This document shows, piece by piece, positions 46 through 64,000 of a stretch of 64,000 nt of DNA. A program made the position numbers and the translations under genes. The stretch covers positions 69,404-133,403 of the forward strand of contig NIVC01000465.1 in assembly GCA_002269645.1 (NCBI GenBank), given 5' to 3'. Numbering within the stretch: position 1 is the first letter of the stretch; each line of letters begins with the position of its first letter. The notes below the pieces were generated by a model, which worked only from the letters and a program-made list of their open reading frames with translations, did not search any database and was not told the DNA's origin. The stretch comes from Macrostomum lignano. Lineage: Eukaryota.

Positions 46-2589
46 TTATGATTTCCAATAGAGTAATGCACACGCGCACGCAGCAATAAGTATGGCAGTA
101 TATACGCCCCTGTGGTTCTTAAAATGAGCATTTAAAGCAATAAGAATTGTACATCGTGGCACTTCATTTTTTGCGCAGCAGAACACGTAAAGACAAAACC
201 AGAGACCAATTGTGCCTATCTCCTTCTTCCAAACACCCTCGCTTTCCTTGTCATGATGGCTCAGTTGTGGATTGACAAGTAGCGATTCGCAGCGGCCTCG
301 CACTATGGCCTTCAGACGGACTTCAAGATAGCTTAGAGCAGTTGCTTTTTCAGCAAGCTTATTAAGCAGCTTTTTTAGCGTTTCAGGATCGTTTATGTCC
401 TCTGCCTCTTCTGTCAATTGATAGATCTCCTCTTCTTTTTTTTCGAAAACTTCCTTCAGCTTTTCGAATGCATGATCCGATCGTTGCAGTGCGCATGGCA
501 GGTCTTTAACGTCCTTATTATCCTCACCCCAAATCATATTTTCCAACAACTCATCACGCTTCCAACGTCCGTCATATTCACCTTCAATAGTTATTTTTGG
601 CACTAACGGCTGGGCAAAAATTTTTTTGATTGCAGCAAACTTTCGAAACCACTCCGGCACCTTGTCGCTGAATTGTCCGTTCAGCACAGAATAGAAATAC
701 CACAGAATGCCGTCTCTGGGCATGTGGTTCATTTTCAGCGGAATGCCAGTTAGATCGACGTCGAAGTCTTCGACAAGCGGAAGATTTAGTTGCAGATCCG
801 GCGTTCCGTCGTGCAGCAGCATCAGAAAAGCAAACCACACGCCAGCAGCATCTAAGTGCCGTCTGAACTCGCCATAGTGCTTGCTGGTCAGCCTGTTGAA
901 CTCGGGGCTCACCAGGAAAGCCTCCAGACGACCGCGGACAATGGCTGCCGCTTTCTGCATCATCAAATCAATACGTTCGTCACTGATTTCTGAGCGCTTG
1001 GCTGAGATCCTGAGAGACTTTCCGGCTTTGATGATTGCCTGGAAGTATTCTTTACTTTCTTCATTAGTTGGCTGGTCTTTCTCCTTTGGTTGAAACTTAA
1101 AGTCACGCAACATCTGTCTAAGATCTTCAAAGACCTCATTTTCCCGCTCTTTGTACGCACTCGTCAGAAAACCAATCACTTCGCTGCGAATTGCTTTAGT
1201 TGTTTTTTCAGCATGTTCAGGTTTCAGGCCCAGCTGACTGCAGTATTCGATTGCGCTGACCTCAACAATCTCTCCAGATGTAAGTTTCCAGATATCGTGT
1301 ATCTCATAGGGCCGACTAGCATGATAGCGAATGTCGTAGCCACCGTCAAGCCTCACCTGAGGAACCAGGCGCTGGGCGTACTTCGTTTTCACATCTTTGA
1401 GTAAGTAATTACTGAGACCGGCTACATTCCGAAGCAGCGAGTGAAAATACTGCAATATTTGCTCTCTCGGCAACTGATAGGTCGGCATGTAGGGCGTCAC
1501 AATTGGATCAACGTCGAGTTCTTTCATGTAAATATTGTAGGTGAGGATGCCGGGCTCAATACCTGCTGCTAGATTCAGCTGTTTCTTAGGATACTCCTTA
1601 TCCTTCGTAGTAGTAGTAGTAGTAGCAGTAGTAGCAGTAGTATCAGTAGTAGTATTAGTAGTAGTAGTACGACGTATTTTGAGCTTAAACTCAAGTGGCT
1701 GATCATCCGTCAGAGTTTTCAGAATCTCATTTTTCATATTGCCACTTTTCTCCGGCAAGGTAACAAAAGTGCGCGCGCAACATGTAAGTTTCGTCCGTCC
1801 ATCTGGGTTTCTGTGTTCACTGGTTTTCATCTTTATTTCATTCGAGTTGAGCCAGCTAGCAACAAGATAAAGTTCCTCATTTATTTCTAGTTGGGCCGTA
1901 GTGACAGTGAAGTTGAGTTCAATTCGAGCCACAGATGGCGGTGTAACCTTTGTTGTTCTATCAGAGCCAATTTGGAGATGAAATATATAGTAGTGTCGAA
2001 ACAGTTCGAAGCTTTGCACCTTTAGGATTACTGAGTAATTACTTCCGTTAATTCCGATGCAAAGATCTTCACCGTCGAATGTCTTGAGCTGTGATGAAAT
2101 TCGGTCAACTCGGAGAAGAAATTCTGCGTTCAAGCAGTCTACACCGCCAAAAGAACTAGTCACTGGTTTTTTAGTGATTTCCAAAGGATAAGAGCTCAGA
2201 GACTCAGAGGTGCAGCTGATCAGCAGTCTCACAGGTAGCACAGGAGTACAAACAATTTGGTCTGTCTCTTCAGAGATGTAAAGGATGAACTCGGTGATAT
2301 TGTGCATGAACTTAGGCTTGAATTCCCTCTTAAGTAACAACGTTCGCTGGGCGGCGCTTTTATCTTCTTCTGCATTGGCGTCGGCATCGCGCGTTTTAAC
2401 CTTATTGATCTTTTCAAAAATTTCAAAAGTTACTTCTTTAAAATAAATGTCACCTTTATTCGTTTTTTTCGATTTATTCGCTTCCTTCCTCGATAGTAAG
2501 AAGTTGACTTCCAAAGGCTTGTGCTTTGTAGGTTCAGACGTGTTCCATTTAGCAAAGTTTTTATCACTCTCTGATGCCGTGCAGGTCAT
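46..2589 (-). CDS. Uncharacterised 847-aa protein; long single exon, possibly the last exon of a larger gene; internal duplicated motif and hydrophobic C-terminus
   Basis: 2.5-kb stop-free, non-repetitive ORF with protein-like composition. The frame stays open upstream to about 2740, with a possible acceptor (ttacag) near 2725. No family recognised. Confidence 0.75.
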   Translation of the reverse strand: MTCTASESDKNFAKWNTSEPTKHKPLEVNFLLSRKEANKSKKTNKGDIYFKEVTFEIFEKINKVKTRDADANAEEDKSAAQRTLLLKREFKPKFMHNITEFILYISEETDQIVCTPVLPVRLLISCTSESLSSYPLEITKKPVTSSFGGVDCLNAEFLLRVDRISSQLKTFDGEDLCIGINGSNYSVILKVQSFELFRHYYIFHLQIGSDRTTKVTPPSVARIELNFTVTTAQLEINEELYLVASWLNSNEIKMKTSEHRNPDGRTKLTCCARTFVTLPEKSGNMKNEILKTLTDDQPLEFKLKIRRTTTTNTTTDTTATTATTTTTTKDKEYPKKQLNLAAGIEPGILTYNIYMKELDVDPIVTPYMPTYQLPREQILQYFHSLLRNVAGLSNYLLKDVKTKYAQRLVPQVRLDGGYDIRYHASRPYEIHDIWKLTSGEIVEVSAIEYCSQLGLKPEHAEKTTKAIRSEVIGFLTSAYKERENEVFEDLRQMLRDFKFQPKEKDQPTNEESKEYFQAIIKAGKSLRISAKRSEISDERIDLMMQKAAAIVRGRLEAFLVSPEFNRLTSKHYGEFRRHLDAAGVWFAFLMLLHDGTPDLQLNLPLVEDFDVDLTGIPLKMNHMPRDGILWYFYSVLNGQFSDKVPEWFRKFAAIKKIFAQPLVPKITIEGEYDGRWKRDELLENMIWGEDNKDVKDLPCALQRSDHAFEKLKEVFEKKEEEIYQLTEEAEDINDPETLKKLLNKLAEKATALSYLEVRLKAIVRGRCESLLVNPQLSHHDKESEGVWKKEIGTIGLWFCLYVFCCAKNEVPRCTILIALNAHFKNHRGVYTAILIAACACALLYWKS

Positions 2590-2872
2590 TTTTTTAGTTT
2601 TTACATTGTTTTTATTAGTGCCAACTTCAATAGAAATTTCTCTGTCCGTTTCACGTCCTTCATCATCACGGTGAATTCGTTTTAATCTCGCAAGGACATG
2701 CAGCTTGCACGGGATCTTATTGTCCTGTAATTCGGTTGTTTAAAATAATTTCTATGTAAACAGATGTTTTGATTTATGATATAGTAGTAGTTACATTGTT
2801 TTTGTAAATCAGGTTTGAAACGAGAATAATATGCGAGTTTTCCCTTAAATATACAAATATAGCTATTATAAC

Positions 2873-3291
<419 letters not shown>

Positions 3292-4379
3292 GTGGAGGAG
3301 AAGGAGGAGGAGTAGTGGCAAAACTTATCCTGATGTTATATACAACTTCCTACCTTGTTACTTTCCTACCTTGTTGCACAAATCAGTAATTACTGCCGAT
3401 GTATTTACCTCATCCGAATTTGCCGCCATGCTCCCCGAGAACGAATCTCGTTGGAGGAGGCACCGGGATTACGAACAATTAGCTATGGAAGTTTGATGGT
3501 GCTTTGTTAAAATTTATTTGAAAGTAAGACAAAGCAAACTTGGCAAGGTTTCAAAACCAAGCTTCAAATTTGGACTCTGAGAGTTAGAAAGCTGAAAGAG
3601 AATTTAGAGAGCCTCAGGAGAAAGAAAAAAACAGCAAATAATTAAGAGGCTCACAAGCGGAGACAAGACTAAATATGTAGAATAGCGCACGTGCACGCGC
3701 AGGCTGCAACAGGCTCCACCAACCCCACACGCACCAACCCCAGCCGCCTCATCACGCAGATTAAGCGCCCTTTACCCACAGACCATGCAATGAGTATAAC
3801 TAAACTGCGCATCCAGCATTGCTTGCCTGGGCTCGTTTTTTGACAAAATGACAAAGCAGAAAAAATGGTCCTCTCTACCCAAGCTCCTTGTTACTGACAC
3901 AATAGCTGGGAATGGCTGCCACTCTAAGGTAAATGCGTGTGGGGAGCTTCCGTCCAGTGATGCTTTTTTAGGAGGTTCCTGGTCTGGGGGACAGACTGCC
4001 TGAAAGCCTGACTCACGAAGCACACTCTCCGCCACAATGCCTTGGACTGTTTGCCTTGCAGGCTGCCCCTTAAATCAAACCCACAATGCTTATCCAAATT
4101 TTTTCCCAAGAGCCCGTTTCAGTAAAAACTTTAGATAATGCATTGCACGTCACATATGCTCACTCAACTCGAGCAACCCCGGAATCTGGAGTGAATTTCC
4201 ACAGCTATACCTTCCGGCAGTTTGGGGTGGGGGAGCGGTGGCAGATTTCAATGCGAATTTTTGTCCTGCTTTTTTGTCCAAACCGCAGTCTACGCTCATA
4301 GTACTTTTTCTTGGTTTGATGTGGCCCGCCACTTCCCTCCAAAAGAAAATGACGCATACCATACACTGCCATTGCGCAT

Positions 4380-5985
4380 TTCTTCTTCTTCCATTCGGGC
4401 GCGCTCGGGCCAGAGCCCATGGCACCGGGCGTCAGACAGCACCCGCCTTCCCGAGGAAGTTCAGCACCGCGACGGCGACGCAGTTCTCGAAAACTGCCCC
4501 GGGCTCCCCCCAGAGGCGGCAGCGGTGTGGAGTCAGGGCGGGACAGGAGATCAGCAGATGGGCCGCCGTCTCCTCCATCGCTGCAGAAGCGGCAGGTGGG
4601 GGCCACGTCAACGCGCCGATGGCGGCCTGGAAGCCCCGCAGGGCGGGGCAGCGGTCGGCGCGCAGCTGGCAAATCAGCCGCTCCTGCCGCCGCGTGAGGT
4701 CGCTCGTCGGCGGAGGCGGCAGGCGGCCCGACATGCAGGCATGGTGCCAGGCAAGCGAGCTCGTGCTCGCCGCCTCGGTGGCCGCCGCATTGTAGGTCTG
4801 GTGCCAGCGGGCCTGCGCGGCAGCCAAAGGAACGGGCGCGGTGCCTTGCCCCAGCGTGGAGCCTTGCTTGGCGATCTCGTCCACGGCCTCGCTGCCGGGG
4901 ATTCCCGCGTGGCCAGGCACCCACTGCAGGTGGACCGAGGTTCTCCGGGCCACGAGGTCGGCGAGGCTGGCCCAGACGGCGTCGATCATGGTGGCGCCCG
5001 TCGACCCGGGGCCGGACGCGAGTGCGGTAAGCGGCGCACTTGTTTGGCGCCAGCTCCATCCGCCACTCGCTTGCCCAGTCAGAGACCGCGTCGATCGCAG
5101 CCTGCGCCTTCGTCTCGGCCTCCTCCACGGTCAGGCCTTGCACTGCGATGGCCAGGTCGTCGGCGTAGAGGAACGGCGTGCAGTCGGACGGCAGGTGGTT
5201 AGGCGTTGATGTACAGCGCAAAGAGCAGAGGGCAAGGACACTCCCCTGTGGCAGGCACTCGCGGAAAAGCCGCCAGCTGCTCAGCGCGCCGTCCACCCTG
5301 ACGGCAGCACGGCGATCGGCCAGGAAGCTGCTGAGCCAGCATTCCCCGGCCGCTGGGATGCCGGTGTTGTGCAGCTTGTACAGCAGGCCCTGCTTCCAGA
5401 CGGTGTCGTACGCCCGCCGGAAGTTGAACAGGACGACGACCGTCCACCTGGCAGGGGCCGACTGGTGGCTGTCACTGATGAGCTGGGTGAGCCGGGCAAT
5501 CTGGTCCTCGGTGCTGCGCCGCTTGCGGAAGCCGGCTTGGGCGGTGTGCAGCAGGTGCCGGGACTTGGCCCACCAGTAGAGCCGCGCTTGAGCCAGCCGC
5601 TCGGCCAGCTTGGCCAGGGTGGAGGTGAGGGCAATCGGCCGGTATGAGCCGATCTCGTCGGGCGGCTTGCCCTTCTTGAGGATCGGCACGGCGCCACGCC
5701 GCGGGGACCTCCCCCTGGGTCCAGGACGCGTTGATCAGCAGCAGGACCGCCCGGCGGCCGGCAGCGCCGAGGTGCTGCAGGTGTTCGGCGCAGATCTCAT
5801 CGGGTCCTGGGGCCTTCCTGGCCGGGAGGGAGCGGAGAGCCCTGTCCTGCTCGCGGTGCGAGAACGGCTTTTCAAAGTCTCTGCTCCCATGGCTGTCAGC
5901 GCCGGCTCGCGAAGCGCTGCTGCGAAAGTTCTCGCGGCGGAGGTCTCGCGTCCTGTGGTCTTACGGGAGGCGGCTGACGGCGGCA
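4380..5985 (-). mobile_element. Decayed, 5'-truncated non-LTR retrotransposon with RT and RNase H (Ingi/I-group-like)
   Basis: RT motifs KAPGPD, PILKKGKP..SYRPIALTS, QAGFR, PQGSVL, YADD. RNase H C-half VHLQWVPGHAGIPGSEAVDEIAK; C-terminal ETAAHLLISCP knuckle; short (GAA)n tail near 4380-4392. Frameshift near 5690 and internal deletion near 5035. Confidence 0.92.
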
Positions 5986-7417: not shown

Positions 7418-9043
7418 ATACAAGTCGAGCGTACGAGCTACACATTACACGAAAACTTTTAAAATGCTTAAAAAAGCATGTATAAAAACACTCGAAACCG
7501 GAAAACTGCTTTTAGTTGTCATCGCAAAAATCTCATATATTTGGCTGTTACGATAATCCAGGGCATCCGCAACACCAGATCTTTCAAACCCGCAATAACA
7601 TAAGTATAACTTTTTTTTCAACATGCTCTACTATGAGTAGTCTGTATGAAAGAATTTTACTTCGGATTTTTCGGAATCAAACTAAGAAAACTACAGAAAT
7701 TTGCCCCGAAACTAAATTGAAAGCCCCTTTGATCAAAACGTTCTACTCTTTTGACATTAAAAGATGAGAAGTATCAAGTTTTTTGCACTAAACTTCATTA
7801 TAACAAATCGGACGTGTTGCAAATGCACTTGTCATAGAATCGGACATAGACTGGAAAATTATATATAATTTCCAATAGAAACACACGATCTGTCGTAGTA
7901 TTAATAATTGTGTAAAAGCAAGAAAGCAAGATGTAAAAGCAAGGTTTCATGGCCTTCACTTCATGGCTGCGAGTCGCCGCGAAAATCATTAATAATTAAT
8001 CCAAATTCACGAAATTTTGTCTATATACTCGTACATATACATCGAACTTTTTAAATGTCACTTCTGACCATGTCAGTGACATTATTGTCGGGATCTTTTT
8101 GCGCGTTGTTTAACCAATTTATGATGGTTTTAAAGTATATTCTACTATTGAATTTCATTTCTTGGCTCTCCAAATGCCTTTGACTCATTCTTTTATCCTT
8201 GACGCACTTGTTCAAGCTCTCATCTACTTTTTGACCGTTTCTTCCTATCGGATCTTTCCATTTCGCGTAAAAACTACCCTTCTTAATTTTAAGCATTCTA
8301 CGTAGCTTGCACGAACTTGTTGGGTACTCCGGTGCTAACACCAACGCCGTTGATTATCGCGGTCTATAATACCTGGTAGCTCGATTCGAAGCACCATGAT
8401 ACAATTTATTATAATGCTGGCCTATAGCTCTAGAATTTATGGGTAAGCATATGTAGGGTAAGATCGTGAAAGAAGCAATAGGGTTTTAGCTTCTGGTCGA
8501 TAGGCCATAACCCAGCCTAGTCTACCTTCAGTCATCCCTTACCCCCCCCCCCTTCCAGCTTGCAGTTAAGTTAGCAAGATGCATTCTGCAAGGGTTTAAC
8601 GAGCGGTTCAGCGTTGGGTATATAGAACATCCTAAGCTGGGACGAAAATATCCTACAACCTTACCGAATGATCCTTTCTGTGCAGCATTCTGTCTGTATC
8701 TCTCTGCCACCACCCGAGCTACCTTCACTGCACTGCCTCGGTGTACAGGCACAGCAAACCAGATAATAGGTAAAACCCCTGGCACATCCCCATGGGATGC
8801 AACAGGAAAGCAACAGTTTATCAGAACGGGCAAACGGGCCAATTCTAGGTCAGCAATAAAAAACGTCTTATTTAAGTTGTTTGCGTCAACTTAAATAACG
8901 AGAACAACCCAACTAAACGAAAGGGAAAACAGGATCATTGTAAGTATTCCTGTAGAAAAAACTATTGCGTTACAATCGATAGCATATAGAATACAAAATA
9001 TTGTCTTCAACTTTCGACATTCAAAGGCTTGCAACCTCGCAGC

Positions 9044-9994
9044 ATGCCTGACGGCGTCAGGGAGCTCTCGCACCACTGGCCGGACAACTGTTCGGACAAG
9101 TTCGAGAACCGTCTAAGATACGGAGTCGGTGCCACCAGGGCAATTGGTTCGCCTGCCATTGTGATTCTGGGCCTTCTCGGGAACGCTCTCACAATTGCAA
9201 TCTTCTCACTGGAGGCTCGGCTGTCGCGATGGAACCGATTTGGTATCTGGTGTGTAGCTCTGGCGATATCGGACTCCAGCGTGCTTATCTTCAGCAGCTT
9301 CATCGACGACTTCCTTGGCAGAGGCTTGGCTCACATTTACGGTAGTGAGGTGCTGAAGCTCGATGCCTCTCATCCGATGAGTTGCCGACTGCTCGAGTAC
9401 ATGCAACACTCGACATTGTTCGCCTCGTCCTACCTGCTAGTGATATTCTCAGCTGACCGACTGCTGACAGTGAGTCAGCCGATGCGAATGATGACTCACC
9501 GGTACGTGACTCAGTCTGTGGCTGCGGCAGTCTCTGTGGCAGTCCTCGGCCTGATTCTCATGTCCCCGGTGATCGCGGTCTATGGACTGGAGACCGCCGG
9601 CTACGAGGATGTCATGTCGTTTAGCTGTCGAATCGCTTTGAACTGCACCGATGGAGGACAGTCAAGCTCAGCAGCAAAGTACATCCTGTACTTTAAAGCA
9701 TTCGGAATATTTGTTGCTCCATGCCTACTGCAAGCGGCACTCAGTGCAGCCATTGTTGCCAAGCTTATTCAGGTGAGACGCTTGAGACGCGACCTGCTGC
9801 CCGGCTCACACGATAAAGACTTGGCGATGTCGCGTTACTATGCCAACCTGGCGGTGTCCATCACCTTCTGTCTGCTGTCGAGTCCGCTCTGCGTAGTGAT
9901 CGTGATGAGGACGGGCTGCGGCCTCTGCGAGCCTCGACCGAGCTGCCGGTGTCACGTCCTTGAACAGGCTGCCAAGCTGCTGGACTCCGTCAAG
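9044..9994 (+). CDS. Class A (rhodopsin-like) GPCR, peptide-receptor-like; exon 1 (TM1-TM6 and start of TM7)
   Basis: GLLGN in TM1, LAISD in TM2, C..SADR in TM3, hydrophobic TM4-6. ATG at 9044; donor aag|GTGCGT at 9995. Confidence 0.9.
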
Positions 9995-10149
9995 GTGCGT
10001 ATACGCTCGATGTTGTCATGCTAGAAAAGCCAAAAAGACGTGATTTTTGAGTACTAGTTCTATTTTTTGTCACTAGTCCAGTGGGCTTCGAGCACTGCTT
10101 GCATCACTCCTTTGAGCTATGACAGAAATAATAGACCAGGTAGATAGAT

Positions 10150-11399: not shown

Positions 11400-13428
11400 G
11401 CTGGCGCCCCTGGTGCTGGCGCGCCCCTAGTGCTGGCGCCCCTGGTGCTGGCGCGCCCCTGGTGCTGGCGCCCCTGGTGCTGGCGCCCCTGGTGCTGGCG
11501 CCCCTGGTGCTGGCGCCCCTGGTGCTGGCGCCCCTGGTGCTGGCGCCCCTGGTGCTGGCGCCCCTGGTGCTGGCGCCCCTGGTGCTGGCGCCCCTAGTGC
11601 TGGCGCCCCTGGTGCTGGCGCCCCTGGTGCTGGCGCCCCTGGTGCTAAAGCCCCTGGTGCTAAAGCCCCTGGTGCTGGCGCCCCTGGTGCTGGCGCCCCT
11701 GGTGCTGGCGCCCCTGGTGCTGGCGCCCCTGGTGCTGGCGCCCCTGGTGCTGGCGCCCCTGGTGCTGGCGCCCCTGGTGCTGGCGCCCCTGGTGCTGGCG
11801 CCCCTGGTGCTGGCGCCCCTGGTGCTGGCGCCCCTGGTGCTGGCGCCCCTGGTGCTGGCGCCCCTGATGCTGGCGCCCCTGGTGCTGGCGCCCCTGGTGC
11901 TGGCGCCCCTGGTGCTGGCGCCCCTGGTGCTGGCGCCCCTGGTGCTGGCGCCCCTGGTGCTGGCGCCCCTGGTGCTAAAGCCCCTGGTGCTGGCGCCCCT
12001 GGTGCTAAAGCCCCTGGTGCTAAAGCCCCTGGTGCTAAAGCCCCTGGTGCTAAAGCCCCTGGTGCTAAAGCCCCTGGTGCTAAAGCCCCTGGTGCTAAAG
12101 CCCCTGGTGCTAAAGCCCCTGGTGCTAAAGCCCCTGGTGCTAAAGCCCCTGGTGCTAAAGCCCCTGGTGCTAAAGCCCCTGGTGCTAAAGCCCCTGGTGC
12201 TAAAGCCCCTGGTGCTAAAGCCCTGGTGCTAAAGCCCCTGGTGCTGGCGCCCCTGGTGCTAAAGCCCCTGGTGCTAAAGCCCCTGGTGCTAAAGCCCCTG
12301 GTGCTGGCGCCCCTGGTGCTGGCGCCCCTGGTGCTAAAGCCCCTGGTGCTAAAGCCCCTGGTGCTAAAGCCCCTGGTGCTGGCGCCCCTGGTGCTGGCGC
12401 CCCTGGTGCTAAAGCCCCTGGTGCTGGCGCCCCTGGTGCTAAAGCCCCTGGTGCTAAAGCCCCTGGTGCTAAAGCCCCTGGTGCTAAAGCCCCTGGTGCT
12501 GGCGCCCTGGTGCTAAAGCCCCTGGTGCTAAAGCCCCTGGTGCTAAAGCCCCTGGTGCTAAAGCCCCTGGTGCTAAAGCCCCTGGTGCTAAAGCCCCTGG
12601 TGCTAAAGCCCCTGGTGCTAAAGCCCCTGGTGCTAAAGCCCCTGGTGCTAAAGCCCCTGGTGCTAAAGCCCCTGGTGCTGGCGCCCCTGGTGCTGGCGCC
12701 CCTGGTGCTAAAGCCCCTGGTGCTAAAGCCCCTGGTGCTAAAGCCCCTGGTGCTAAAGCCCCTGGTGCTAAAGCCCCTGGTGCTAAAGCCCCTGGTGCTA
12801 AAGCCCCTGGTGCTAAAGCCCCTGGTGCTAAAGCCCCTGGTGCTAAAGCCCCTGGTGCTAAAGCCCCTGGTGCTGGCGCCCCTGGTGCTAAAGCCCCTGG
12901 TGCTAAAGCCCCTGGTGCTAAAGCCCCTGGTGCTGGCGCCCCTGGTGCTAAAGCCCCTGGTGCTAAAGCCCCTGGTGCTAAAGCCCCTGGTGCTAAAGCC
13001 CCTGGTGCTAAAGCCCCTGGTGCTAAAGCCCCTGGTGCTAAAGCCCCTGGTGCTAAAGCCCCTGGTGCTGGCGCCCCTGGTGCTAAAGCCCCTGGTGCTA
13101 AAGCCCCTGGTGCTAAAGCCCCTGGTGCTAAAGCCCCTGGTGCTAAAGCCCCTGGTGCTGGCGCCCCTGGTGCTAAAGCCCCTGGTGCTAAAGCCCCTGG
13201 TGCTGGCGCCCCTGGTGCTAAAGCCCCTGGTGCTAAAGCCCCTGGTGCTAAAGCCCCTGGTGCTAAAGCCCCTGGTGCTAAAGCCCCTGGTGCTAAAACC
13301 CCGGATGCTAAAACCCCGGATGCTAAAACCCCGGATGCTAAAACCCCGGATGCTAAAGCCCCTGGTGCTAAAGCCCCTGGTGCTAAAGCCCCTGGTGCTA
13401 AAGCCCCTGGTGCTAAAACCCCTGGTGC
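11400..13428. repeat. 15-bp minisatellite (ctggtgctggcgccc / ctggtgctaaagccc), about 2 kb
   Basis: Direct reading; two variants that shift in frequency along the array. The [10 protein letters not shown] ORFs are artefacts. Confidence 0.98.
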
Positions 13429-13879
13429 AACTTCAAGCCTGAAGATTTTTAAACGATATTTTAATTAACAAAACGATTTTCTAAATATTCTTATCAGACT
13501 ACTGTTTGGAAGAAGCAGTGGCTAGGGACCCGTATTGAAATTATTGCTAAATATGCGGAAATGAGTTTAAAAAAAGTCTCAATACCAATTTCGTAACTTT
13601 GCAGTGTGCGAAAGGTCACAAAATTAATAATAATATACAACTCTTAATTTAAACGGAACTGGTAAAATGTCGATAAAAAACAGTTATATTGCTTTGTAAG
13701 AAACGGCTTATCAAAATCTAGGGTCATTAAAGTACGCCATTTTATTGTGGGAAATATAAAAAAGTAGATGGCGCTTATGACAGTTAGGAATTATTATTGT
13801 ACTGTATGCGGTAGCCTGGTTGCTGACATTAAGGAGCATTGATTACACCAGGGTGTACTAATTCTATGAAGTACGCTAT

Positions 13880-19567: not shown

Positions 19568-20854
19568 TTGTTTGATAAAAATCACTACATCATTATGGAC
19601 GATGCAGTTGGCATACTTCGCGGTTACGTCATGCCTGGCGTTGTACTTTTCGGACTGCTTGGCAACGTGACAACAATGGCCATATTCCTGCTGGAAAATG
19701 CTGGAAGCCGTCGCTGGACCCGGTTCGCCGTGTATGGCATCGCTATAGCCGTCTCGGACACGTTTGCGCTGATTTTTAACACGTTTCTGGACGACTTTCT
19801 TGGCCGGGGACTCTGGTACGCGTCTGGCGGAGCAATTCTTATCAAGATTGACACTATATCCAGCGTCACCTGCAAACTGATGGAGTACATTCCCAGCGTG
19901 GCCTACTTCACTTCGTCTTATCTGCTCATCATATTCAGTCTGGACCGCACGCTGACCATATTCCGGCCGTTACAGTTTATGTCACATTTTTACATCAAAC
20001 CTACTCTGCTGATTGTCGGGTTAACTTACCTGTGCGGCCTGACTCTGATGCTGCCGATGGCTCTCATTCACGATATTCAACTGCAGAACACTAGTAAAAT
20101 TGGTCTCCAGCTTGAGCGCAAGTGCGAGCTTCAAGCACAGAGCGGCGTCAACCGGAGCCTGTCTCGCGTCATGCTCTACTTCATGACGTTCGGTTCGTTC
20201 GTTGTGCCGTCTGTCATTGTCTGCCTCCTGGGCGTTGTGATCGTGGCCAAGCTGACAGTGATTCGACGCAATAGAGCGAGTATCTTGCCAACAGCTGCCG
20301 ACAATCAGATGGAGATGAGCAGGTTCTATGCCCACCTGACCCTGGCGATCGCCTATTGCATTCTGGTCCTCCCTCTGGCTGTCAGCATCTGCGTTCGCCA
20401 GGTGTTCGAGAGCCGGCCCGAGGCCTACCAGAAGCAGCACGCCAAGTACGCCGCTTTCCTGTCGCACAACTCTCGATTCACTTCGTCTGTGAAGGATTTC
20501 AACTACGTGCTGAACTTCTGGGTGTACCTGGTGTTCGTGCGCTCGTTCAGGCGGCGATCGTTGCTTGTTGTGTCCCAGCTGCTGGTGGCCCTGCGCTGTC
20601 ATCGACTCTGCCCCGGCTGCAGCTGCTGCCTGGCCGCTGAGGATCGGGTTCAACGACTTCGCGAGGCCAAAGGCAAGTCGATTAAATCGGCCCTGTACAG
20701 ACACCGTAGTCAGCAGCAGACGGCTGTTGCTCTGGCCACCAGGACCAGTCGAGGAAAAGCAGAGCAGCAGCATCAGCAGCAGCAGCAGCTTATCAAGCAG
20801 AAGGACTACCACAATCAACCTTCGCACACTGAGCTCACCGTGACCACTGTCTGA
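19568..20854 (+). CDS. Class A GPCR, paralogue of 9044-10938; 7TM region uninterrupted
   Basis: GLLGN, IAVSD, CKLMEY..FSLDR, NFWVYLVFVRSF. First ATG at 19595; a possible acceptor (aaacag|) at 19560 may indicate an upstream exon. Confidence 0.92.
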   Translation: MFDKNHYIIMDDAVGILRGYVMPGVVLFGLLGNVTTMAIFLLENAGSRRWTRFAVYGIAIAVSDTFALIFNTFLDDFLGRGLWYASGGAILIKIDTISSVTCKLMEYIPSVAYFTSSYLLIIFSLDRTLTIFRPLQFMSHFYIKPTLLIVGLTYLCGLTLMLPMALIHDIQLQNTSKIGLQLERKCELQAQSGVNRSLSRVMLYFMTFGSFVVPSVIVCLLGVVIVAKLTVIRRNRASILPTAADNQMEMSRFYAHLTLAIAYCILVLPLAVSICVRQVFESRPEAYQKQHAKYAAFLSHNSRFTSSVKDFNYVLNFWVYLVFVRSFRRRSLLVVSQLLVALRCHRLCPGCSCCLAAEDRVQRLREAKGKSIKSALYRHRSQQQTAVALATRTSRGKAEQQHQQQQQLIKQKDYHNQPSHTELTVTTV

Positions 20855-22640: not shown

Positions 22641-22837
22641 GACTACTCACGCTAGTGCAGTAGCAGACCCTTTTTGAACCTTGGCCGAAACACCAAATTG
22701 TTAGCACGTAGTCTATGGCTTCAGCTGCTCATGCAGTTATAGATTAAAGATATAGAAACGATATAGAATCGGACAAAGTTTAACATAGATGTTTTGTTTT
22801 GATTAAAATCATTTTAAATAATCAACTTAAAGACTCA

Positions 22838-23134
22838 ATGATCCGCATTAGAATTCTTCACGGCAGGCGAGCCTATCTGATTGACTGCCCGCCTTGGTTC
22901 TCTGTGCTGCAACTCAAACAGCGAGTCCACCTCGCCATCCGATCGTTCCCGGAGACAGTCACCGAAATGAAGCTGATCTTCAAGGCGGAGGTTCTGCAGG
23001 ACGTCGCATCGCTGTACGCTTGCGGCGTCACCGACAACGACGTGCTAGTGCTGATCAACGTCAAAGAGGAAGAGCGACTGCGCAAGGTGATCCAAGATCG
23101 AGTCAGGACTCTGCGAGTGCGCGCTGAGAAGTGA
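22838..23134 (+). CDS. Small ubiquitin-like domain protein (98 aa), no C-terminal GG
   Basis: MIRIRI...SVLQLKQRV...KLIFKAEVLQD..SL...GVTDNDVLVLI follows the ubiquitin-fold pattern; GC-rich coding island in an AT-rich context; ATG at 22838. Confidence 0.8.
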   Translation: MIRIRILHGRRAYLIDCPPWFSVLQLKQRVHLAIRSFPETVTEMKLIFKAEVLQDVASLYACGVTDNDVLVLINVKEEERLRKVIQDRVRTLRVRAEK

Positions 23135-23249: not shown

Positions 23250-23286
23250 AATGACTAACTAACTAACTAACTAACCTAACCAACTA

Positions 23287-23343
<57 letters not shown>

Positions 23344-23344
23344 G

Positions 23345-23422
<78 letters not shown>

Positions 23423-23476
23423 CAACTAACTAACTAACTAACTACGTAACTAACTACGTAACTAACTAACTAACTG

Positions 23477-23570
<94 letters not shown>

Positions 23571-23571
23571 G

Positions 23572-23608
<37 letters not shown>

Positions 23609-23672
23609 CGTAACTAACTAACTAACTAACTGACTAACTAACTAACTAACTGACTAACTAACTAACTAACTA
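23250..23672. repeat. (CTAA)n microsatellite
   Basis: Direct reading. Confidence 0.97.
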
Positions 23673-24180
23673 ATAATAGTTTCATCAAGAACATAAGTCA
23701 TTTAATTGAAGCTTTATATATATTGAGCCAATCTAAAGTAAATCTGCCAGTAATTATTGATTTAATAGTGTAACTAAATAGCTACTATACATTCTTACAA
23801 AAGCTTTACTCTTTCTCGTAATACGCAAGCTGCACTACTGGTACAAGTAGAAAGTAGCGTTTGTGAAAAACTTTCTAATATGAAAACCTATAGCGTTTAT
23901 AAAGCCAGTTAATAACAGAAAAGTTTGATTGTTCAAACGTAAAATGACAGAAAAGGTCAAAATCTTACTAGAGATCTGAATAAATATCAAACATATAATG
24001 TACAGCAGAATCGACTTAGATGTACATGTTATGTGACAAGGCTTTTTCAAGACAGCTTGTTAGATATTTAAGAATAAATGCATATAGTGGAACAGATTAA
24101 AACAAAATCAAAACTAGCGGCATCACTGGAATATTAAACGCCAATTTGAGTTTGTGAGTTTGTTCGCAAAATTATTATTG

Positions 24181-24324
24181 TCAGAATTTACAGTAGGGTG
24201 CAAAGTTTTCTATCTTCGCTTTGTGCTTTTGAGCAAGTTTCTCCGCAAGATCGTTGAATTGCGCAGAAGTCGTTCGCATTCTGGATGAATTGTCTGCCAG
24301 TTGCTTGACTGCGGCACCTCGTCT
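24181..24324 (-). CDS. R-SNARE (VAMP-like) coding exon resembling the tomosyn/amisyn C-terminus; not in the ORF track
   Basis: tattctgcag|AGA..TGA translates to RRGAAVKQLADNSSRMRTTSAQFNDLAEKLAQKHKAKIENFAPYCKF*. Zero-layer Arg; layer residues V,L,S,M,S,F,A,L at +4,+7,+11,+14,+18,+21,+25,+28. Confidence 0.75.
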   Translation of the reverse strand, partial: RRGAAVKQLADNSSRMRTTSAQFNDLAEKLAQKHKAKIENFAPYCKF

Positions 24325-24407
24325 CTGCAGAATATTCCAGTGACTTGCATATTGAGCAGAGACACAAATTTAATAATACACGAAATCAATAGTGCAACGT
24401 TACACAC

Positions 24408-24509
24408 CTCGATGTCCTTTATTATGCAAATATCCTTGTAACTGTCAATATTGCTTTTTCTTGTCAGGCTCAGTGACTTGCCAGATTTTCCAACCTTCAC
24501 GAAATCCAT
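24408..24509 (-). CDS. Candidate upstream exon for the second SNARE exon (MDFVKVGKSGKSLSLTRKSNIDSYKDICIIKDIE)
   Basis: ATG at 24509; donor gag|GTGTGT at 24407, phase 0, would join the exon at 24324 across an 83-bp intron. Speculative. Confidence 0.35.
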
Positions 24510-24954
24510 ATAGCTGATTTGTTTTATTTAAAACAAAACCTTTTAAATTCGGTTGCTTTACGAGCGTATTAATGAGAATCTTTTTCAGAGCGAGTTTTTA
24601 TGTAGTCGGAATGAGCTAATAAATTTAGAAGATGACAGCATAGATGAATTTCTTTTAGATAAAATTAGCGTTGACAGGCTGTAACTAAACTGATGTATGG
24701 TGATGCCTTCGAATAGTTAAATTTAATTTTTAAACAGATTGGTCGGGTGTTTATTCCTTTAGCTATTCTACCTAAATTGGAAAGTGACATCGACAAAGAT
24801 ATATAGTACACCTGTGCGTGCATCAGTTTCAACCTTCCTGACTGCGAGTAAACCGCTTATTTAAAAAATCTAATTATAGATCGAACATGCATCTAACTTT
24901 AAAAGTACGCTGTTTTTCAAAATCTCTCTGTGCGCAACCGTTTTTAACACTCAA

Positions 24955-25255
24955 TCGGTGCCACTCAGTCTGAATCAGCGCCATTCAGTCCGAATCGGCG
25001 CCACTCAATCCGAATCGGCGCCACTCAATCCGAATCGGCGCCACTCAATCCGAATCGGCGCCACTCAATCCGAATCGGCGCCACTCAATCCGAATCGGCG
25101 CCACTCAATCCGAATCGGCGCCACTCAATCCGAATCGGCGCCACTCAGTCCGAATCGGCGTCACTCAGTCCGAATCGGCGCCACTCAATCCGAATCGGCG
25201 CCGAATCAGCGCCACTCAATCCGAATTGGCACCACTCAGTCTGAATCGGCGCCAC
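24955..25255. repeat. 20-bp minisatellite (ccgaatcggcgccactcaat)
   Basis: Direct reading. Confidence 0.95.
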
Positions 25256-25564
25256 TAGCTATTATCAATGAAGATTGATTTCAGACTAACGATAGCCAAT
25301 GAGAATGCGGAGAGGAACAGAGGGTTGAAGCTGTGAACTGCTGTGAGGGGCCGAGCAATTAAACTGGAGGGATAGAACGACAGCGTAGTGAGGTTGGCGG
25401 CGCTATAGGGTGGTGTGACTGGCGTCAGCCAATGAGAATCGAGGCAAGGACAGAAAGCTGAATTGAACTCAGTAATAAAAAAGACGGAGAGAGGTTGGCA
25501 GTATTTTAGTCTGCCAGCCACTGAACATAAGACTAGAATGTTAAAAGCAATAAAGTGCCGATAA

Positions 25565-25918: not shown

Positions 25919-27056
25919 GACTGAATCAGTAACCCAGCCTGACTGTCAGGCGACATTTTTATGGGCGTGACATTGAATTTATAGCCAATTTTGCATCACA
26001 AAAGTGCATTGAGAAATTTGATTTTTTAGTATATTGTATAATAAATTAATTTCGACCTTCTAATAATGGAAATAAAATAATTTCGAAGAAAGTTTGACTA
26101 CAAGAATAGCTCGCTTTCTTGCTAATGCAATAAAAACAATAAATAATCACTTAGATCAGAGGAAAATTACGGAATCTTTGTAAGCGTGTGCAACGAACAA
26201 AAATATTTTCCAGAACAAAATATCAACTGTTATCTATATAACAATTAAACAACAATGTACAAGCTTGCTAGAATTACAACTTTAAATAAATTATGCATAA
26301 AAAATGGCGGAATGAAAGTACACAAACTGCTTAGGGAGTTAGGAGATATACTATGCTTTTCTAGTAAAATATAGCGAAGATGGTGTACAACAATCTTCAG
26401 CAACTACAACAAGAACTAGAATTTGTAAATTGCAATCAAAACGGTTATTAATGCAAAATTCACGATGTAATTATGAGTGAAATATTTCAATGCTAATAAG
26501 CGCGAAATAGTTACAATTTAGGACGAATTAATTTTTAGAAATTAATATTAACGTATTTATTGGATGAATCTGGAAAAAAAGTGTGAACTGATATTACTGA
26601 GATTAAACGTTCACAGATTTCTAAAAATCCGGAACGATTTTACCACAACGCCATTAACAAAAATTTAACGATTAACACGAGAAAGAAGCGGATGAAGGAC
26701 CATACGTTTAAATAGAAAAAAATCAAAAAAATAAAACTATTGATTGGGTGACACCAAACAGTTTAACGACAAGGGTTACCAATTAACTAAAACTAAAAAT
26801 ATATGCTGCTATATGCTTCGTTGTTATTCTGTTATTAGCTAACATTACTAGTGACGCCCGTGCATGCCTAAAATTGGTCGCATTAAATATTTTTTATAAA
26901 AATATTGAAACCATACAACAGATAAACACAATTGTTATAAAAATGTTGTTATTATATCCGGGGCAAGACAGACTTAATTAAGCACGAATAACAATATCCT
27001 ACAATATTGATACACAATGTGTAGTGTAGCACTGATCGTGCTTCTAAATTCTAAAG

Positions 27057-46430
<19,374 letters not shown>

Positions 46431-51965: not shown

Positions 51966-53520
51966 TTTATGTTTGACATGGTAGCTGTTTTGTGTCTGAC
52001 ATGGTGGCTCTTTAATGTTTGAGCTGGTGGCTCTTTTATGTTTGACATGGTGGCACTTTAATGTCTGAAATGGAGTCATGTATACGCTTGACATGGTGAC
52101 TCGTAGATGTTTGACAAAGTGGCTCTTTTATGTTCGACATGTGGCTCTTTAATGTTTGACATGGTGGCTCTTTAATGTTTGACATGGTGGCTCTTTAATG
52201 TTTGACATGGTGGGTCTTTAATTTATGACATGGTGGCTCTTTTATGTTTGACATGATGGCTCTTTAATGTTCGACATGGTGGCTGTTTAATGTTTGTTAT
52301 GTAGTCATATGTATATGTTTTACATGGTGGCTCTTTTATGTGTGACATGGAGTCACGTATATATTTGACATGGAGTCACATATGTTTGACATGGTGGCTC
52401 TTTAGTGTTCGATATGGTGGCTCTTTAATGTTTGACATGGTGGCTCTTTTATGTTTGACATAGTGGCTCTTTAATGTCTGACATGGTGGCTCTTTAATGT
52501 TTGACATGGTGGCTCTTTTATGTTTGACATGATGGCTCTTTAATGTTCGACATGGTGGGCTGTTTAATGTTTGTTATGTAGTCATATGTATATGTTTTAC
52601 ATGGTGGCCCTTTTATGTGTGACATGGAGGCACGTATATATTCGACATGGAGTCACATATGTTTGACATGGTGGCTCTTTAGTGTTCGATATGGTGGCTC
52701 TTTAATGTTTGACATGGTGGCTCTTTAATGTCTGACATGGTGGCTCTTTAATGTTTGACATGGTGGCTCTTTTATGTTCGACATGTTGGCTCTTTAGTGT
52801 TTGACATGGCTCTTTAATGTTTGACATGGTGGCTCTTTTATGCTTGACATGGTGGCTCTTTAATGTTCGACATGGTGGCTCTTTAATGTTTGACATGGTG
52901 GCTCTTTTATGCTTGACATGGTGGCTCTTTTATGTTCGACATGGTGGCTCTTTTTTGTTCTACATGGTAACTCTTTTATGTTTGATACGGTGGCTTTTTA
53001 ATATCTGACATTGTGGCTCTTCTATGTTTGACATTGTGGTTCTTTTATGTTTAACATGGTGGCTCTTTAATGTTTGACATGGTGGCTCTTTAATGTACGA
53101 CATAAAGGTTCGTTTATGTTCGACATGGTGGCTCTTTTAGGTTTGACATGGTAGCTCTTTTATGTTCGACATGGTGGCTCTTTTAGGTTTGACATGGTGG
53201 CTCTTTTAGGTTCGAAATGGTGGCTCTTTAATGTTCGACATGGTGGCTCTTTAATGTTTGACATGCTAGCTCTTTAATGTTCGACATAGTGGCTCTTTTA
53301 TGTTTGGCATGGTGGCTCTTTAATGTTCTTCATGGTGGCTCTTTTACGTTTGACATGGTGGCACTTTAATGTTCGACGTGGTGGCTCTTTAATGTTCGAA
53401 ATGGTGACTCTTTAATGTTTCACATGGTGGCTCTTTAATGTTTGACATAGAGTCACGTATTTGTTTTACATGGTGCCCATGTAATGTTTGACATGGTGCC
53501 TCTTTTATGTTTGACATTGT
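51966..53520. repeat. 23-bp satellite A, second array
   Basis: Direct reading. Confidence 0.95.
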
Positions 53521-53577
53521 GCTTTTTTATGTTTAGCAGTTTCGTGTTTTCAAGGTGTTTTATAAAAAAATTATTTT

Positions 53578-62900: not shown

Positions 62901-64000
62901 ATTTTTTAAATGACGCTTCTACGATTTTTACATGACGCTTTTATGATTTTTTAGATGACGCTTCTATGATTTTTTACATGACGCTTCTATGATTTTTTAC
63001 ATGACGCTTCTATGATTGTTTACACGATGCTTCTATGATTTTTTACATGACGCTTCTATGATTTTTTACATGACGCTTCTATGATTTTTACATGACGCTT
63101 CTATGATTGTTTACATGACGCTTCTATGATTGTTTACATGACGCTTCTATGATTGTTTATATGACGCTTCTATGACGCGCGCTTCTATGATTTTTTACAT
63201 GACGCTTCTATGATTGTTTACACGATCTTCTATGATTTTTTACATGGACGCTTCTATGATTTTTTACATGACGCTTCTTTGATTTTTACATGACGCTTCT
63301 ATGATTATTTCATTGACGCTTCTACGATTTCTGCAGGACGCTTCAATGGATTTTTACATGACACCTCTATGATTTTTACATGACGCTTCTATGATTGTTT
63401 TTACATGACGCTTCTATGATTGTTTACATGACGCTTCTATGCTTTTTTTACATGACGCTTCTATGATTTTTTACATGACGCCTACTATGATTTTTACATT
63501 ACGCTTCTATGATTGTTTACATGACGCTTCCATGATTGTTTACATGACGCTTCTATGATTTTTTACATGACGCTTCTATGATTGTTTACATGACGCTTCT
63601 ATGATTGTTTACATGACGCTTCTATGATTTTTTAAATGACGTTTTTTTTGATTTTTATATGACCCTCTATGATTTTTTAAATGACGTCTATTTTTTTTAT
63701 ATTACGCTCTTACGATTTTTTACATGACGCTTCTATGATTGTTTACACGATGCTTCTATGATTTTTTACATGACTCTTCTATGATTTTTACATGACGCTT
63801 TAATTTTTTCATACGCTTCTCGATTTTTTACATGACGTTCTATGATTTTTTACATGACGCTTCTATGATTGTTTGCATGACGCTTCTATGATTGTTTACA
63901 TGACGCTTCTATGATTTTTTACATGACGCTTCTATGCTTTTTACATGATGCTTCCACGATTTTTTACATGACGCTTCTATGATTTTTTACATGACGCTTT
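53915..64000 (-). mobile_element. Related Helitron-like element 3 (3' end only), grading into the large satellite
   Basis: cccc-aac-gggg hairpin + cgtagattgCTAG|T at 53915; degenerate repeats of this end region near 54330 and 54780. Confidence 0.5.
55000..64000. repeat. ~23-bp satellite B (acatgacgcttctatgattgttt), >9 kb, with a ~2.27-kb higher-order repeat
   Basis: Direct reading; the rare variant containing ctgcag occurs at 56976, 59252, 61513 and 63331. Confidence 0.98.

What the first reader, a model, noticed from the sequence alone, without database searches (positions are those of the whole stretch)
24181..24324. Hidden second R-SNARE exon downstream of tomosyn: candidate swappable SNARE tail
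Seen: this exon is not in the ORF track. It is on the same strand as tomosyn, 2.7 kb past its stop, behind a clean phase-0 acceptor (tattctgcag|), and is 144 nt like the canonical terminal exon 27200-27057. From the zero-layer Arg onward, 13 of 36 residues are identical to that exon (RG..L..RMR..A..LAQK.K.K). All eight C-terminal layer positions are compatible with a VAMP-type helix, and there is no transmembrane anchor. Splicing from the GC donor at 27600 would give EIANALQ|RRGAAV, echoing the conserved ALDERG motif but three residues shorter. Established: tomosyn inhibits exocytosis by using this motif as a VAMP mimic with syntaxin and SNAP-25. Inference: exon duplication created mutually exclusive last exons with different SNARE specificity or strength. 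I know of tomosyn splice variation in the central variable region, not a swapped SNARE motif.
Basis: partly seen in the sequence, partly recalled or inferred. Interest (0 to 1): 0.8.

Follow-up and report, generated by a model that had tools for sequence, protein, structure and literature searches.

The report
Tomosyn-derived mini SNARE gene in flatworm
Just downstream of the flatworm Macrostomum lignano's tomosyn gene lies an old, still intact copy of tomosyn's SNARE-coding last exon; a public gene prediction already treats it as part of a separate 79-residue protein rather than a swappable tomosyn tail.

Summary
On the minus strand, 24324..24181 reads RRGAAVKQLADNSSRMRTTSAQFNDLAEKLAQKHKAK..., 13/36 identical to tomosyn's terminal exon (27200..27057). 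In-window tblastn gives E=1e-5 and a profile comparison gives E=2.4e-6. Pfam Synaptobrevin is the top family but stays below its threshold. The window is Macrostomum lignano.

The copy is old, with no similarity at DNA level. It kept the zero-layer Arg and all eight C-terminal core positions, which a neutral simulation reproduces in under 1% of runs. It has therefore been, or long was, under protein-level selection.

The "mutually exclusive tomosyn last exon" reading is untested and less likely. UniRef A0A1I8IDN3 (79 aa, "V-SNARE coiled-coil homology domain-containing protein") joins this exon to an ATG exon at 24509..24408 across an 83-nt GT-AG intron. No database protein joins the exon to tomosyn.

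The equal 144-nt length is a coincidence. The window copy carries a 1-nt indel, and the sister copy's frame ends KDRKLCTLL (CaaX-like), which matches tomosyn's tail better.

No RNA data could be reached, so the transcript structure is inferred. No homologue was found outside M. lignano, and a cestode tomosyn locus has no such exon. Interest is moderate.

The parts
24181..24324 (-). Candidate exon as read in the window: RRGAAVKQLADNSSRMRTTSAQFNDLAEKLAQKHKAKIENFAPYCKF*. It carries R-SNARE layers 0 to +8 (zero-layer Arg codon at 24321..24319) and has no TM segment.
24188..24214 (-). Tail region with a 1-nt indel (between 24214 and 24213, aag|ata versus aagGat in the sister copy). The other frame here reads (E)DRKLCTLL*, with its stop at 24190..24188. 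That is the frame used by UniRef A0A1I8IDN3. It aligns better with tomosyn's [10 protein letters not shown] tail and ends in a CaaX-like CTLL.
24325..24407 (-). 83-nt GT-AG intron (GAG|gtgtgt ... ttctgcag|A) joining the two exons of the mini-gene model. An in-frame TAA at 24372 lies upstream of the acceptor and there is no ATG between them, so the exon needs a splice to be translated from the Arg.
24408..24509 (-). Putative first coding exon, MDFVKVGKSGKSLSLTRKSNIDSYKDICIIKDIE. The ATG is at 24509 and an in-frame TAA lies 21 nt upstream. It shows no detectable similarity to tomosyn. It is the only ATG-started, phase-0, GT-donor exon between the tomosyn stop and the acceptor.
27057..27200 (-). 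Canonical terminal exon of tomosyn (STXBP5 orthologue), encoding SNARE layers -1 to +8 and the [10 protein letters not shown] tail.
27201..27599 (-). Last tomosyn intron, GC-AG type (cag|gcaagt ... cctacag|C). It contains a 53-nt x 4.6 tandem repeat at 27319..27560.
27600..27727 (-). Penultimate tomosyn exon (..[42 protein letters not shown]), ending in phase 0. It encodes the N-terminal SNARE layers (M, I, A, A, I, A at -7 to -2).
26556..26561 (-). First AATAAA after the tomosyn stop, about 500 nt downstream. It is a plausible tomosyn poly(A) signal lying between the two SNARE exons.
23761..23766 (-). First ATTAAA after the mini-gene stop, about 420 nt downstream. No AATAAA follows. It is a possible poly(A) signal of the mini-gene.

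Best explanation
The exon is an old duplicate of the terminal, SNARE-encoding exon of Macrostomum lignano tomosyn, and it has been kept under protein-level selection.

It is most likely the second exon of a separate two-exon mini-gene: exon 1 at 24509..24408, an 83-nt intron, then exon 2 from 24324. The product is about 79-81 residues and carries the C-terminal two-thirds of an R-SNARE motif (layers -2 to +8). It has neither tomosyn's WD40 scaffold nor a transmembrane anchor.

Inferred mechanism: like tomosyn's own tail, and like the SNARE-only TOM-1B isoform of C. elegans, the peptide would bind syntaxin/SNAP-25 acceptor complexes in place of synaptobrevin and so modulate exocytosis, probably by inhibiting it.

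In the ancestral reading frame, preserved in the sister copy A0A1I8IDN3, the protein ends in a polybasic stretch plus CTLL. This suggests geranylgeranyl anchoring to the target membrane.

Shown: the homology, the intact frame and heptad core, the gene-model geometry, and the existence of a public prediction. Inferred: expression, transcript structure, t-SNARE binding and prenylation.
For: Organism and gene: the window's exons are about 99-100% identical to M. lignano UniRef A0A1I8JK79. A related 338-aa protein is named syntaxin-binding protein 5 and carries Lgl_C plus Synaptobrevin domains.

Homology to the tomosyn tail: tblastn E=1e-5, BLASTP 7e-8, hhalign E=2.4e-6, all gapless and in register. 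Similarity falls with phylogenetic distance of the tomosyn compared: 32 bits to the neighbouring gene, 31 to the M. lignano paralogue, 22 to P0003 (an unidentified metagenome tomosyn), and 18 for the exon against the cestode tail.

Constraint: in-register nucleotide identity by codon position is 17/25/14 of 36, with no DNA-level alignment above shuffles. In a neutral simulation conditioned on the same amino-acid identity, an open frame with Arg-0 and eight core-compatible layers occurs in 0.9% of runs. All nine layers being conservative occurs in 0.03%.

Gene model: UniRef A0A1I8IDN3 (79 aa, 'V-SNARE coiled-coil homology domain-containing protein') equals exon 1 plus exon 2 with two substitutions. 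The exon cannot be translated without a splice, and 24509..24408 is the only ATG/GT exon available upstream. Pfam Synaptobrevin rises from 16.8 bits (exon alone) to 18.7 (window two-exon product) and 21.1 (A0A1I8IDN3).

Precedent for a functional SNARE-only tomosyn product: C. elegans TOM-1B (PMC10112904).
Against: No transcript evidence could be reached. M. lignano contigs are absent from the encoding-contig index, and how the UniRef model was produced is unknown to me.

The exon-1 donor GAG|GTGTGT matches the M. lignano GT[G/A]AG motif only partly.

In the two-exon product, exon 1 supplies hydrophobic residues only at layers -1 and -2. Asp occupies -3 and -4, so the SNARE motif is incomplete.

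Pfam stays below its gathering score, and a PDB sequence search finds no SNARE.

No homologue was found in 1.84 billion representative proteins other than the M. lignano sister copy.

The window copy has a frameshift in its tail. If real, it removes the CaaX-like end.
Confidence: 0.5

Rival explanations
1. The exon is an alternative, mutually exclusive last exon of tomosyn, spliced from the GC donor after 27600 to the acceptor at 24324. This would give full-length tomosyn a different SNARE C-half. It could coexist with the mini-gene.
For: Same strand. Donor and acceptor are both phase 0, so the join ...EIANALQ|RRGAAV... is in frame. The exon is a paralogue of the canonical terminal exon. The donor is a rare GC type, a class linked to alternative splicing in other animals (my own knowledge). 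Average M. lignano introns are 1.1-1.4 kb, so a 3.3-kb intron is not unusual (PMC5730564).
Against: No protein in any searched collection joins tomosyn to this exon; the only model is the 79-aa protein. The join is three residues short, so layers -3 to -7 would become S, A, R, M, Q instead of I, A, A, I, M. The Pfam score of the hybrid (17.9 bits) is no better than that of the mini-gene product (18.7 or 21.1). An AATAAA lies between the two exons at 26561. A cestode tomosyn locus has no second SNARE exon within 10 kb downstream. An adjacent ATG exon with its own donor would have no role in this model.
Confidence: 0.15
2. Non-functional relic. The exon is a decayed duplicate that happens to stay open, and the UniRef 79-aa protein is a spurious ab initio prediction.
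For: No homologue outside M. lignano. The profile score is below threshold. The window copy has a frameshift in the tail relative to the sister copy. The exon-1 donor is weak and exon 1 resembles nothing. About 14% of the neutral simulations stay open.
Against: Retention of Arg-0 and all eight core layers at 36% identity is rare under neutrality (0.9%, or 0.03% with the stricter test). Codon position 2 is far better conserved than position 3, although the DNA is otherwise saturated. The acceptor is intact, and an in-frame ATG exon is preserved in two copies.
Confidence: 0.2
3. Spliced-leader model. The M. lignano spliced leader, which ends in ...TTGCATG, is trans-spliced onto the 24324 acceptor, possibly on a read-through tomosyn precursor. 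It would donate the start codon and give a 48-residue peptide, M-RRGAAVKQ...
For: The SL ends in ATG, and the trans-acceptor motif is [T/C]TNCAG (PMC8629364). The acceptor here is CTGCAG|AGA and the exon is in phase 0, so the SL AUG would be in frame. About 30-39% of M. lignano genes are trans-spliced, and about 7% of assembled transcripts are multi-gene precursors.
Against: A cis donor 83 nt upstream (24408) would normally capture this acceptor. The public model uses cis-splicing. The tomosyn-to-exon distance (2.7 kb, only about 300 nt of it tandem repeat) exceeds the 1-kb repeat-adjusted operon threshold. This is purely a motif argument.
Confidence: 0.1

Closest known systems
Tomosyn (STXBP5) C-terminal R-SNARE motif, the adjacent gene's own terminal exon
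   Same: Arg at the zero layer. The same heptad core at layers 0 to +8 (5 identical, 4 conservative). Shared RMR and LAQK-K-K motifs. A polybasic tail and no transmembrane anchor. Significant gapless alignment.
   Different: Only 36% identical. It is not attached to the WD40/Lgl scaffold in the public gene model. The N-terminal half of the SNARE motif (layers -7 to -3) is absent or degenerate. In the sister copy the tail ends in a CaaX-like CTLL instead of FWQF.
C. elegans TOM-1B / TOM-1S short isoform (R-SNARE domain only; PMC10112904)
   Same: A tomosyn-derived product consisting essentially of the R-SNARE domain without WD40 repeats. It is shown to be active in vivo, inhibiting growth-cone protrusion.
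   Different: TOM-1B is made from the tomosyn gene itself through an alternative 5' exon and shares the canonical SNARE exons. Here a diverged duplicate exon lies downstream of the gene with its own putative start exon.
Amisyn (STXBP6) and synaptobrevin/VAMP-type 'brevins' (Pfam PF00957)
   Same: An R-SNARE-type coiled coil that can occupy the VAMP position. Amisyn likewise lacks a membrane anchor (my own knowledge). Pfam Synaptobrevin is the top family hit, in register.
   Different: Scores are below the Pfam gathering threshold. There is no N-terminal domain (amisyn) and no TM helix (VAMP). A PDB sequence search finds no VAMP or amisyn.
Mutually exclusive duplicated exons in SNARE genes (SNAP-25a/b exon 5), and tomosyn splice variants in the scaffold (Drosophila exon 13A/13B, PMC8612732)
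   Same: Exon duplication within or next to a SNARE-pathway gene as a source of variant coiled-coil segments.
   Different: For tomosyn, known alternative splicing affects scaffold loops, not the SNARE motif. Here there is no junction evidence, and the public model is a separate gene.
Ykt6 (prenylated R-SNARE)
   Same: If the CTLL end of the sister copy is a true CaaX box, this would be an R-SNARE-like protein anchored by lipid rather than by a TM helix.
   Different: Ykt6 has a longin domain and a CCAIM farnesylation/palmitoylation motif, and it is universally conserved. This protein is tomosyn-derived and lineage-restricted, and the window copy lacks the motif in its reading frame.

Membership tests
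R-SNARE / V-SNARE coiled-coil homology domain (Pfam PF00957, PROSITE V-SNARE profile) | Arg at the zero layer, followed in 3-4 heptad register by hydrophobic or small residues at layers +1 to +8 | tested here: met
   R, V, L, S, M, S, F, A, L at offsets 0, 4, 7, 11, 14, 18, 21, 25, 28. Pfam aligns the Arg to the same profile column as in tomosyn.
R-SNARE / V-SNARE coiled-coil homology domain (Pfam PF00957, PROSITE V-SNARE profile) | Profile score above the curated threshold | tested here: not met
   PF00957 scores 16.8 bits (exon), 18.7 (window two-exon product) and 21.1 (A0A1I8IDN3), against a gathering score of 26.4. The canonical tomosyn tail scores 33.9. UniRef nevertheless names A0A1I8IDN3 a V-SNARE coiled-coil homology domain protein. 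I could not rerun that profile.
R-SNARE / V-SNARE coiled-coil homology domain (Pfam PF00957, PROSITE V-SNARE profile) | Complete 16-layer motif, including N-terminal layers -7 to -1 | tested here: not met
   In the two-exon product, layers -1 to -7 read I, I, D, D, S, L, S. In the tomosyn hybrid they read L, I, S, A, R, M, Q (read). The Pfam alignment starts only 3-6 residues before the Arg.
R-SNARE / V-SNARE coiled-coil homology domain (Pfam PF00957, PROSITE V-SNARE profile) | Forms a four-helix complex with syntaxin and SNAP-25 | not testable with these tools
   Requires in vitro assembly or multimer modelling with M. lignano t-SNAREs. The single-chain AF2 model has low confidence (pLDDT 69).
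Alternative (mutually exclusive) terminal exon of tomosyn | Same strand, downstream of the shared donor, phase-compatible acceptor, homologous to the canonical exon | tested here: met
Alternative (mutually exclusive) terminal exon of tomosyn | A transcript or protein that joins tomosyn's penultimate exon to this exon | tested here: not met
   Word-index searches of 5.8 billion proteins and an exhaustive phmmer search of 1.84 billion representatives return only the 79-aa stand-alone protein.
Alternative (mutually exclusive) terminal exon of tomosyn | Conservation of the second exon at tomosyn loci of related species | tested here: not met
   In the Anoplocephala perfoliata tomosyn locus L001, the best downstream match has E=0.13 and nothing is convincing within 10 kb. 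This is only one, distant, flatworm; no Macrostomum genomes were reachable.
Stand-alone protein-coding gene | Start codon, in-frame GT-AG splice, stop codon, and an independent gene model | tested here: met
   ATG at 24509, donor at 24408|gt, acceptor ag|24324, stop at 24181 (or 24188 in the sister-copy frame); UniRef A0A1I8IDN3.
Stand-alone protein-coding gene | Evidence of transcription, its own 5' end and poly(A) site | not testable with these tools
   M. lignano is not in the contig index. Only hexamer motifs were found.
CaaX-prenylated protein | Cys at position -4, followed by two mostly aliphatic residues and X (Leu implies geranylgeranyl) | tested here: inconclusive
   The sister copy ends ...KHKAKDRKLCTLL, which meets the motif. 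The window frame ends ...APYCKF, which does not; the CTLL frame survives out of frame at 24188..24214. No prenylation predictor was available.

The most novel reading that the evidence does not exclude
M. lignano has turned a duplicate of tomosyn's SNARE exon into an independent, scaffold-free 'half-SNARE' decoy. It would act as a natural equivalent of the C-terminal VAMP peptides used in vitro, possibly tethered to the plasma membrane by a polybasic-CaaX geranylgeranyl anchor. Alternatively or additionally, the same exon can be spliced onto tomosyn, giving the first case of a swappable SNARE motif in a tomosyn.
Probability: 0.15. Interest if true: 0.65.

Novelty: new member of a known kind. 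Interest (0 to 1): 0.4.

Why it matters
Tomosyn's inhibitory activity is split between its SNARE tail and its WD40 scaffold. How much the tail does on its own is debated. [quoted passage not shown]

A naturally evolved and selectively maintained stand-alone tomosyn tail would be an evolutionary experiment on that question, all the more so if it has its own lipid anchor. M. lignano also allows RNAi and transgenesis.

If the exon is instead spliced onto tomosyn, it would be the first alternative SNARE motif in this family.

The protein is already in UniProt as an uncharacterised prediction. It appears restricted to one lineage, and nothing about its expression is shown here. The finding is therefore a lead, not a discovery.

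Tried and rejected
- RNA-level test through assemblies of public runs: look-ups of P0006, the unspliced 99-aa ORF, the neighbouring GPCR ORF (two starts) and the ubiquitin-like ORF all returned nothing. M. lignano is evidently not indexed.
- Homologues: an exhaustive phmmer search of the exon and two word-index searches found only the sister copy.
- A PDB sequence search found no SNARE; the only hit was RIC1 at E=0.5.
- A DNA-level alignment of the two exons plus flanks scored no better than shuffles (22 against a shuffle maximum of 27). The duplication boundaries therefore cannot be traced.
- I considered whether the in-frame 'NILQ' just upstream of the acceptor echoes tomosyn's 'NALQ', which would hint at a retro-copied junction. 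I rejected this: CTGCAG is simply the acceptor consensus, there is no DNA-level support, and a stop lies at 24372.
- I considered exon 1 as a diverged copy of tomosyn's penultimate exon. BLASTP and hhalign do not extend into it.
- The AF2 single-sequence model of A0A1I8IDN3 has low confidence (pLDDT 69; strands in exon 1, two helices at 38-49 and 54-67). I did not use it for fold search.
- Equal exon length (144 nt) as evidence of a swap was rejected as coincidence (a 3-residue offset plus a frameshift).
- tRNA and Rfam scans of the window were empty.
- The Wasik et al. 2015 genome paper was not held, so the evidence behind the UniRef model could not be checked.

Full report
**What is at the coordinates.** On the minus strand, the sequence ...ggaatattctgcag| is followed from 24324 to 24181 by an open frame reading RRGAAVKQLADNSSRMRTTSAQFNDLAEKLAQKHKAKIENFAPYCKF*. 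The canonical last exon of the upstream gene, 27200..27057, reads [47 protein letters not shown]. The exon before it ends at 27600 with ...EIANALQ in phase 0, followed by a GC donor (cag|gcaagt). Every coordinate and count in the finding is correct. This includes 13/36 identities from the zero-layer Arg, the 2.7-kb distance, and the in-frame hypothetical join.

**Organism and gene.** A C-terminal model of the upstream gene retrieves Macrostomum lignano UniRef proteins. One of these, A0A1I8JK79, is about 99-100% identical to the window's exons. The search also retrieves an older M. lignano paralogue, a protein named syntaxin-binding protein 5 with Lgl_C and Synaptobrevin domains, and a cestode homologue. 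The window is therefore M. lignano, and the gene is its tomosyn (STXBP5) orthologue.

**Is the resemblance more than chance?** Yes.
- In-window tblastn of the exon finds the canonical exon at E=1e-5, and the next hit is 0.63.
- Pairwise BLASTP gives 7e-8.
- hhalign against four flatworm tomosyn tails gives E=2.4e-6, gapless over 42 columns.
- Pfam Synaptobrevin is the top family with the Arg in the right column, but it scores 16.8 bits against a threshold of 26.4. The canonical tail scores 33.9.
- A PDB sequence search finds no SNARE.
- Similarity is highest to the neighbouring tomosyn and falls for more distant tomosyns.

The exon therefore descends from tomosyn's tail, not from a VAMP.

**Age and constraint.** No DNA-level alignment of the two exons or their flanks exceeds shuffles. 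In the protein register, nucleotide identity is 17, 25 and 14 of 36 at codon positions 1, 2 and 3. All nine core positions (layers 0 to +8) are identical or conservative: R/R, V/L, L/L, S/T, M/M, S/A, F/Y, A/A, L/L.

I ran a simple neutral simulation starting from the canonical exon and conditioned on 11-15/36 amino-acid identities. In it, 14% of sequences stay open, 0.9% also keep Arg-0 and a compatible core, and 0.03% keep all nine layers conservative. Even so, it argues against a freely decaying pseudo-exon.

**Which transcript?** An in-frame TAA lies at 24372 and there is no ATG before the acceptor, so the exon must be spliced to be translated from the Arg. Between the tomosyn stop and the acceptor, the only ATG-started, phase-0, GT-donor exon is 24509..24408 (MDFVKVGKSGKSLSLTRKSNIDSYKDICIIKDIE). 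It is separated from the exon by an 83-nt intron.

Searching the exon against 5.8 billion proteins returns one hit, UniRef A0A1I8IDN3. This is a 79-residue M. lignano protein named 'V-SNARE coiled-coil homology domain-containing protein'. An exhaustive phmmer search of 1.84 billion representatives, and a third search with the full product, find nothing else. In particular, they find no protein that joins tomosyn to this exon.

**The frameshift.** A0A1I8IDN3 ends ...KHKAKDRKLCTLL*, while the window reads ...KHKAKIENFAPYCKF*. The window contains the other ending out of frame (EDRKLCTLL*, ORF 24188..24367). The two copies therefore differ by one G at 24214/24213.

The sister frame aligns with tomosyn's [10 protein letters not shown] (KDRKL against KDKKF). 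It also raises the Pfam score to 21.1 bits, against 18.7 for the window product. It is therefore the ancestral frame. The window carries either an assembly error or a derived allele. The DV1 line has duplicated chromosomes and a redundant assembly (PMC8629364).

Two consequences follow. First, the '144 nt like the canonical exon' argument is a coincidence. Second, the ancestral product ends in a polybasic stretch plus CTLL, which is a CaaX-like motif. That last point is an inference, and no predictor was available to test it.

**Structural reading of the models.** In canonical tomosyn, layers -7 to -1 are M, I, A, A, I, A, G. A 27600->24324 join removes three residues and gives Q, M, R, A, S, I, L for the same layers. 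The two-exon product gives S, L, S, D, D, I, I.

In either model only layers -2 to +8 look SNARE-like, and Pfam gains just 1-2 bits from either upstream context. The product is therefore best described as a C-terminal 'half-SNARE'. The single-sequence AF2 model has low confidence (pLDDT 69, helices 38-49 and 54-67) and adds nothing.

**Other signals.**
- An AATAAA lies about 500 nt after the tomosyn stop (26561). After the mini-gene stop, only ATTAAA hexamers occur (23766 and 23706).
- The M. lignano spliced leader ends in ATG and its acceptor motif is [T/C]TNCAG (PMC8629364). The acceptor here (CTGCAG|AGA, phase 0) would let an SL-donated AUG start the peptide. This is a third model, supported only by motifs.
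- A cestode tomosyn locus has its SNARE motif in a single exon and no second SNARE exon within 10 kb downstream.

**Comparison with what is known.** Tomosyn splice variation described in Drosophila concerns a scaffold loop, exon 13A/13B (PMC8612732). C. elegans makes a SNARE-only isoform, TOM-1B, from an internal 5' exon, and it is active in growth cones (PMC10112904). The M. lignano unit would reach a similar product by exon duplication and gene birth next to the parent.

The protein already exists as an uncharacterised database entry. I therefore rate it a new member of a known kind (anchorless R-SNARE decoys), not a new kind.

**Verdict.** My estimates for the four models are:

| Model | Estimate |
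|---|---|
| Separate mini-gene | about 0.5 |
| Relic | about 0.2 |
| Tomosyn isoform | about 0.15 |
| SL-initiated peptide | about 0.1 |

Public SL-read, poly(A) and RNA-seq tracks for this species (PMC5730564) would settle the question quickly.

Noticed in passing
window 27598-27599 (minus strand), intron 27201-27599: The last tomosyn intron uses a GC donor (CAG|GCAAGT) rather than GT. It also contains a 53-nt tandem repeat x4.6 at 27319..27560.
   Followed up: partly
window 24213-24214: There is a single-base indel relative to UniRef A0A1I8IDN3 (aag-ata versus aagGat). It shifts the last 8-10 codons and removes a CaaX-like CTLL end. It could be an assembly error or a real allele.
   Followed up: partly
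window 54996-63999: A 9-kb satellite array of a 23-nt unit (about 396 copies, 87% matches, consensus ATGACGCTTCTATGATTTTTAA) runs off the end of the window. A different 23-nt array lies at 53006..53534.
   Followed up: no
window 9029-10024 (+) and 19568-20854 (+): There are two rhodopsin-family GPCR ORFs (Pfam 7tm_1, E=4e-15 and 1e-17). They are paralogous to each other and lie on the strand opposite to tomosyn.
   Followed up: no
window 22799-23134 (+): A ubiquitin-like ORF (Pfam ubiquitin, 22 bits, below threshold) is convergent with the mini-gene. An (ACTA)n microsatellite of 105 copies at 23254..23673 lies between them.
   Followed up: no
window 4205-5689 (-): A reverse-transcriptase ORF (RVT_1, E=3e-27) sits in a 65% GC island and overlaps other long ORFs. 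It is probably a retroelement fragment.
   Followed up: no
window 46-2589 (-): An 847-residue uninterrupted ORF has an internal duplication-like structure and no Pfam match.
   Followed up: no
window 28438-28986, 24953-25256, 2866-3321, 11462-13442, 38449-40685, 44805-45640: The window is unusually rich in mini- and microsatellite arrays. These generate long spurious ORFs (poly-Leu, LSVC, SIYL and PLVLK repeats), including one inside a tomosyn intron and one between tomosyn and the mini-gene.
   Followed up: no
L001 20567-20779 (Anoplocephala perfoliata): In the cestode, the whole tomosyn SNARE motif is encoded by one exon. The intron that splits the motif in M. lignano (ALQ|QGLERG) is therefore not shared.
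   Followed up: partly
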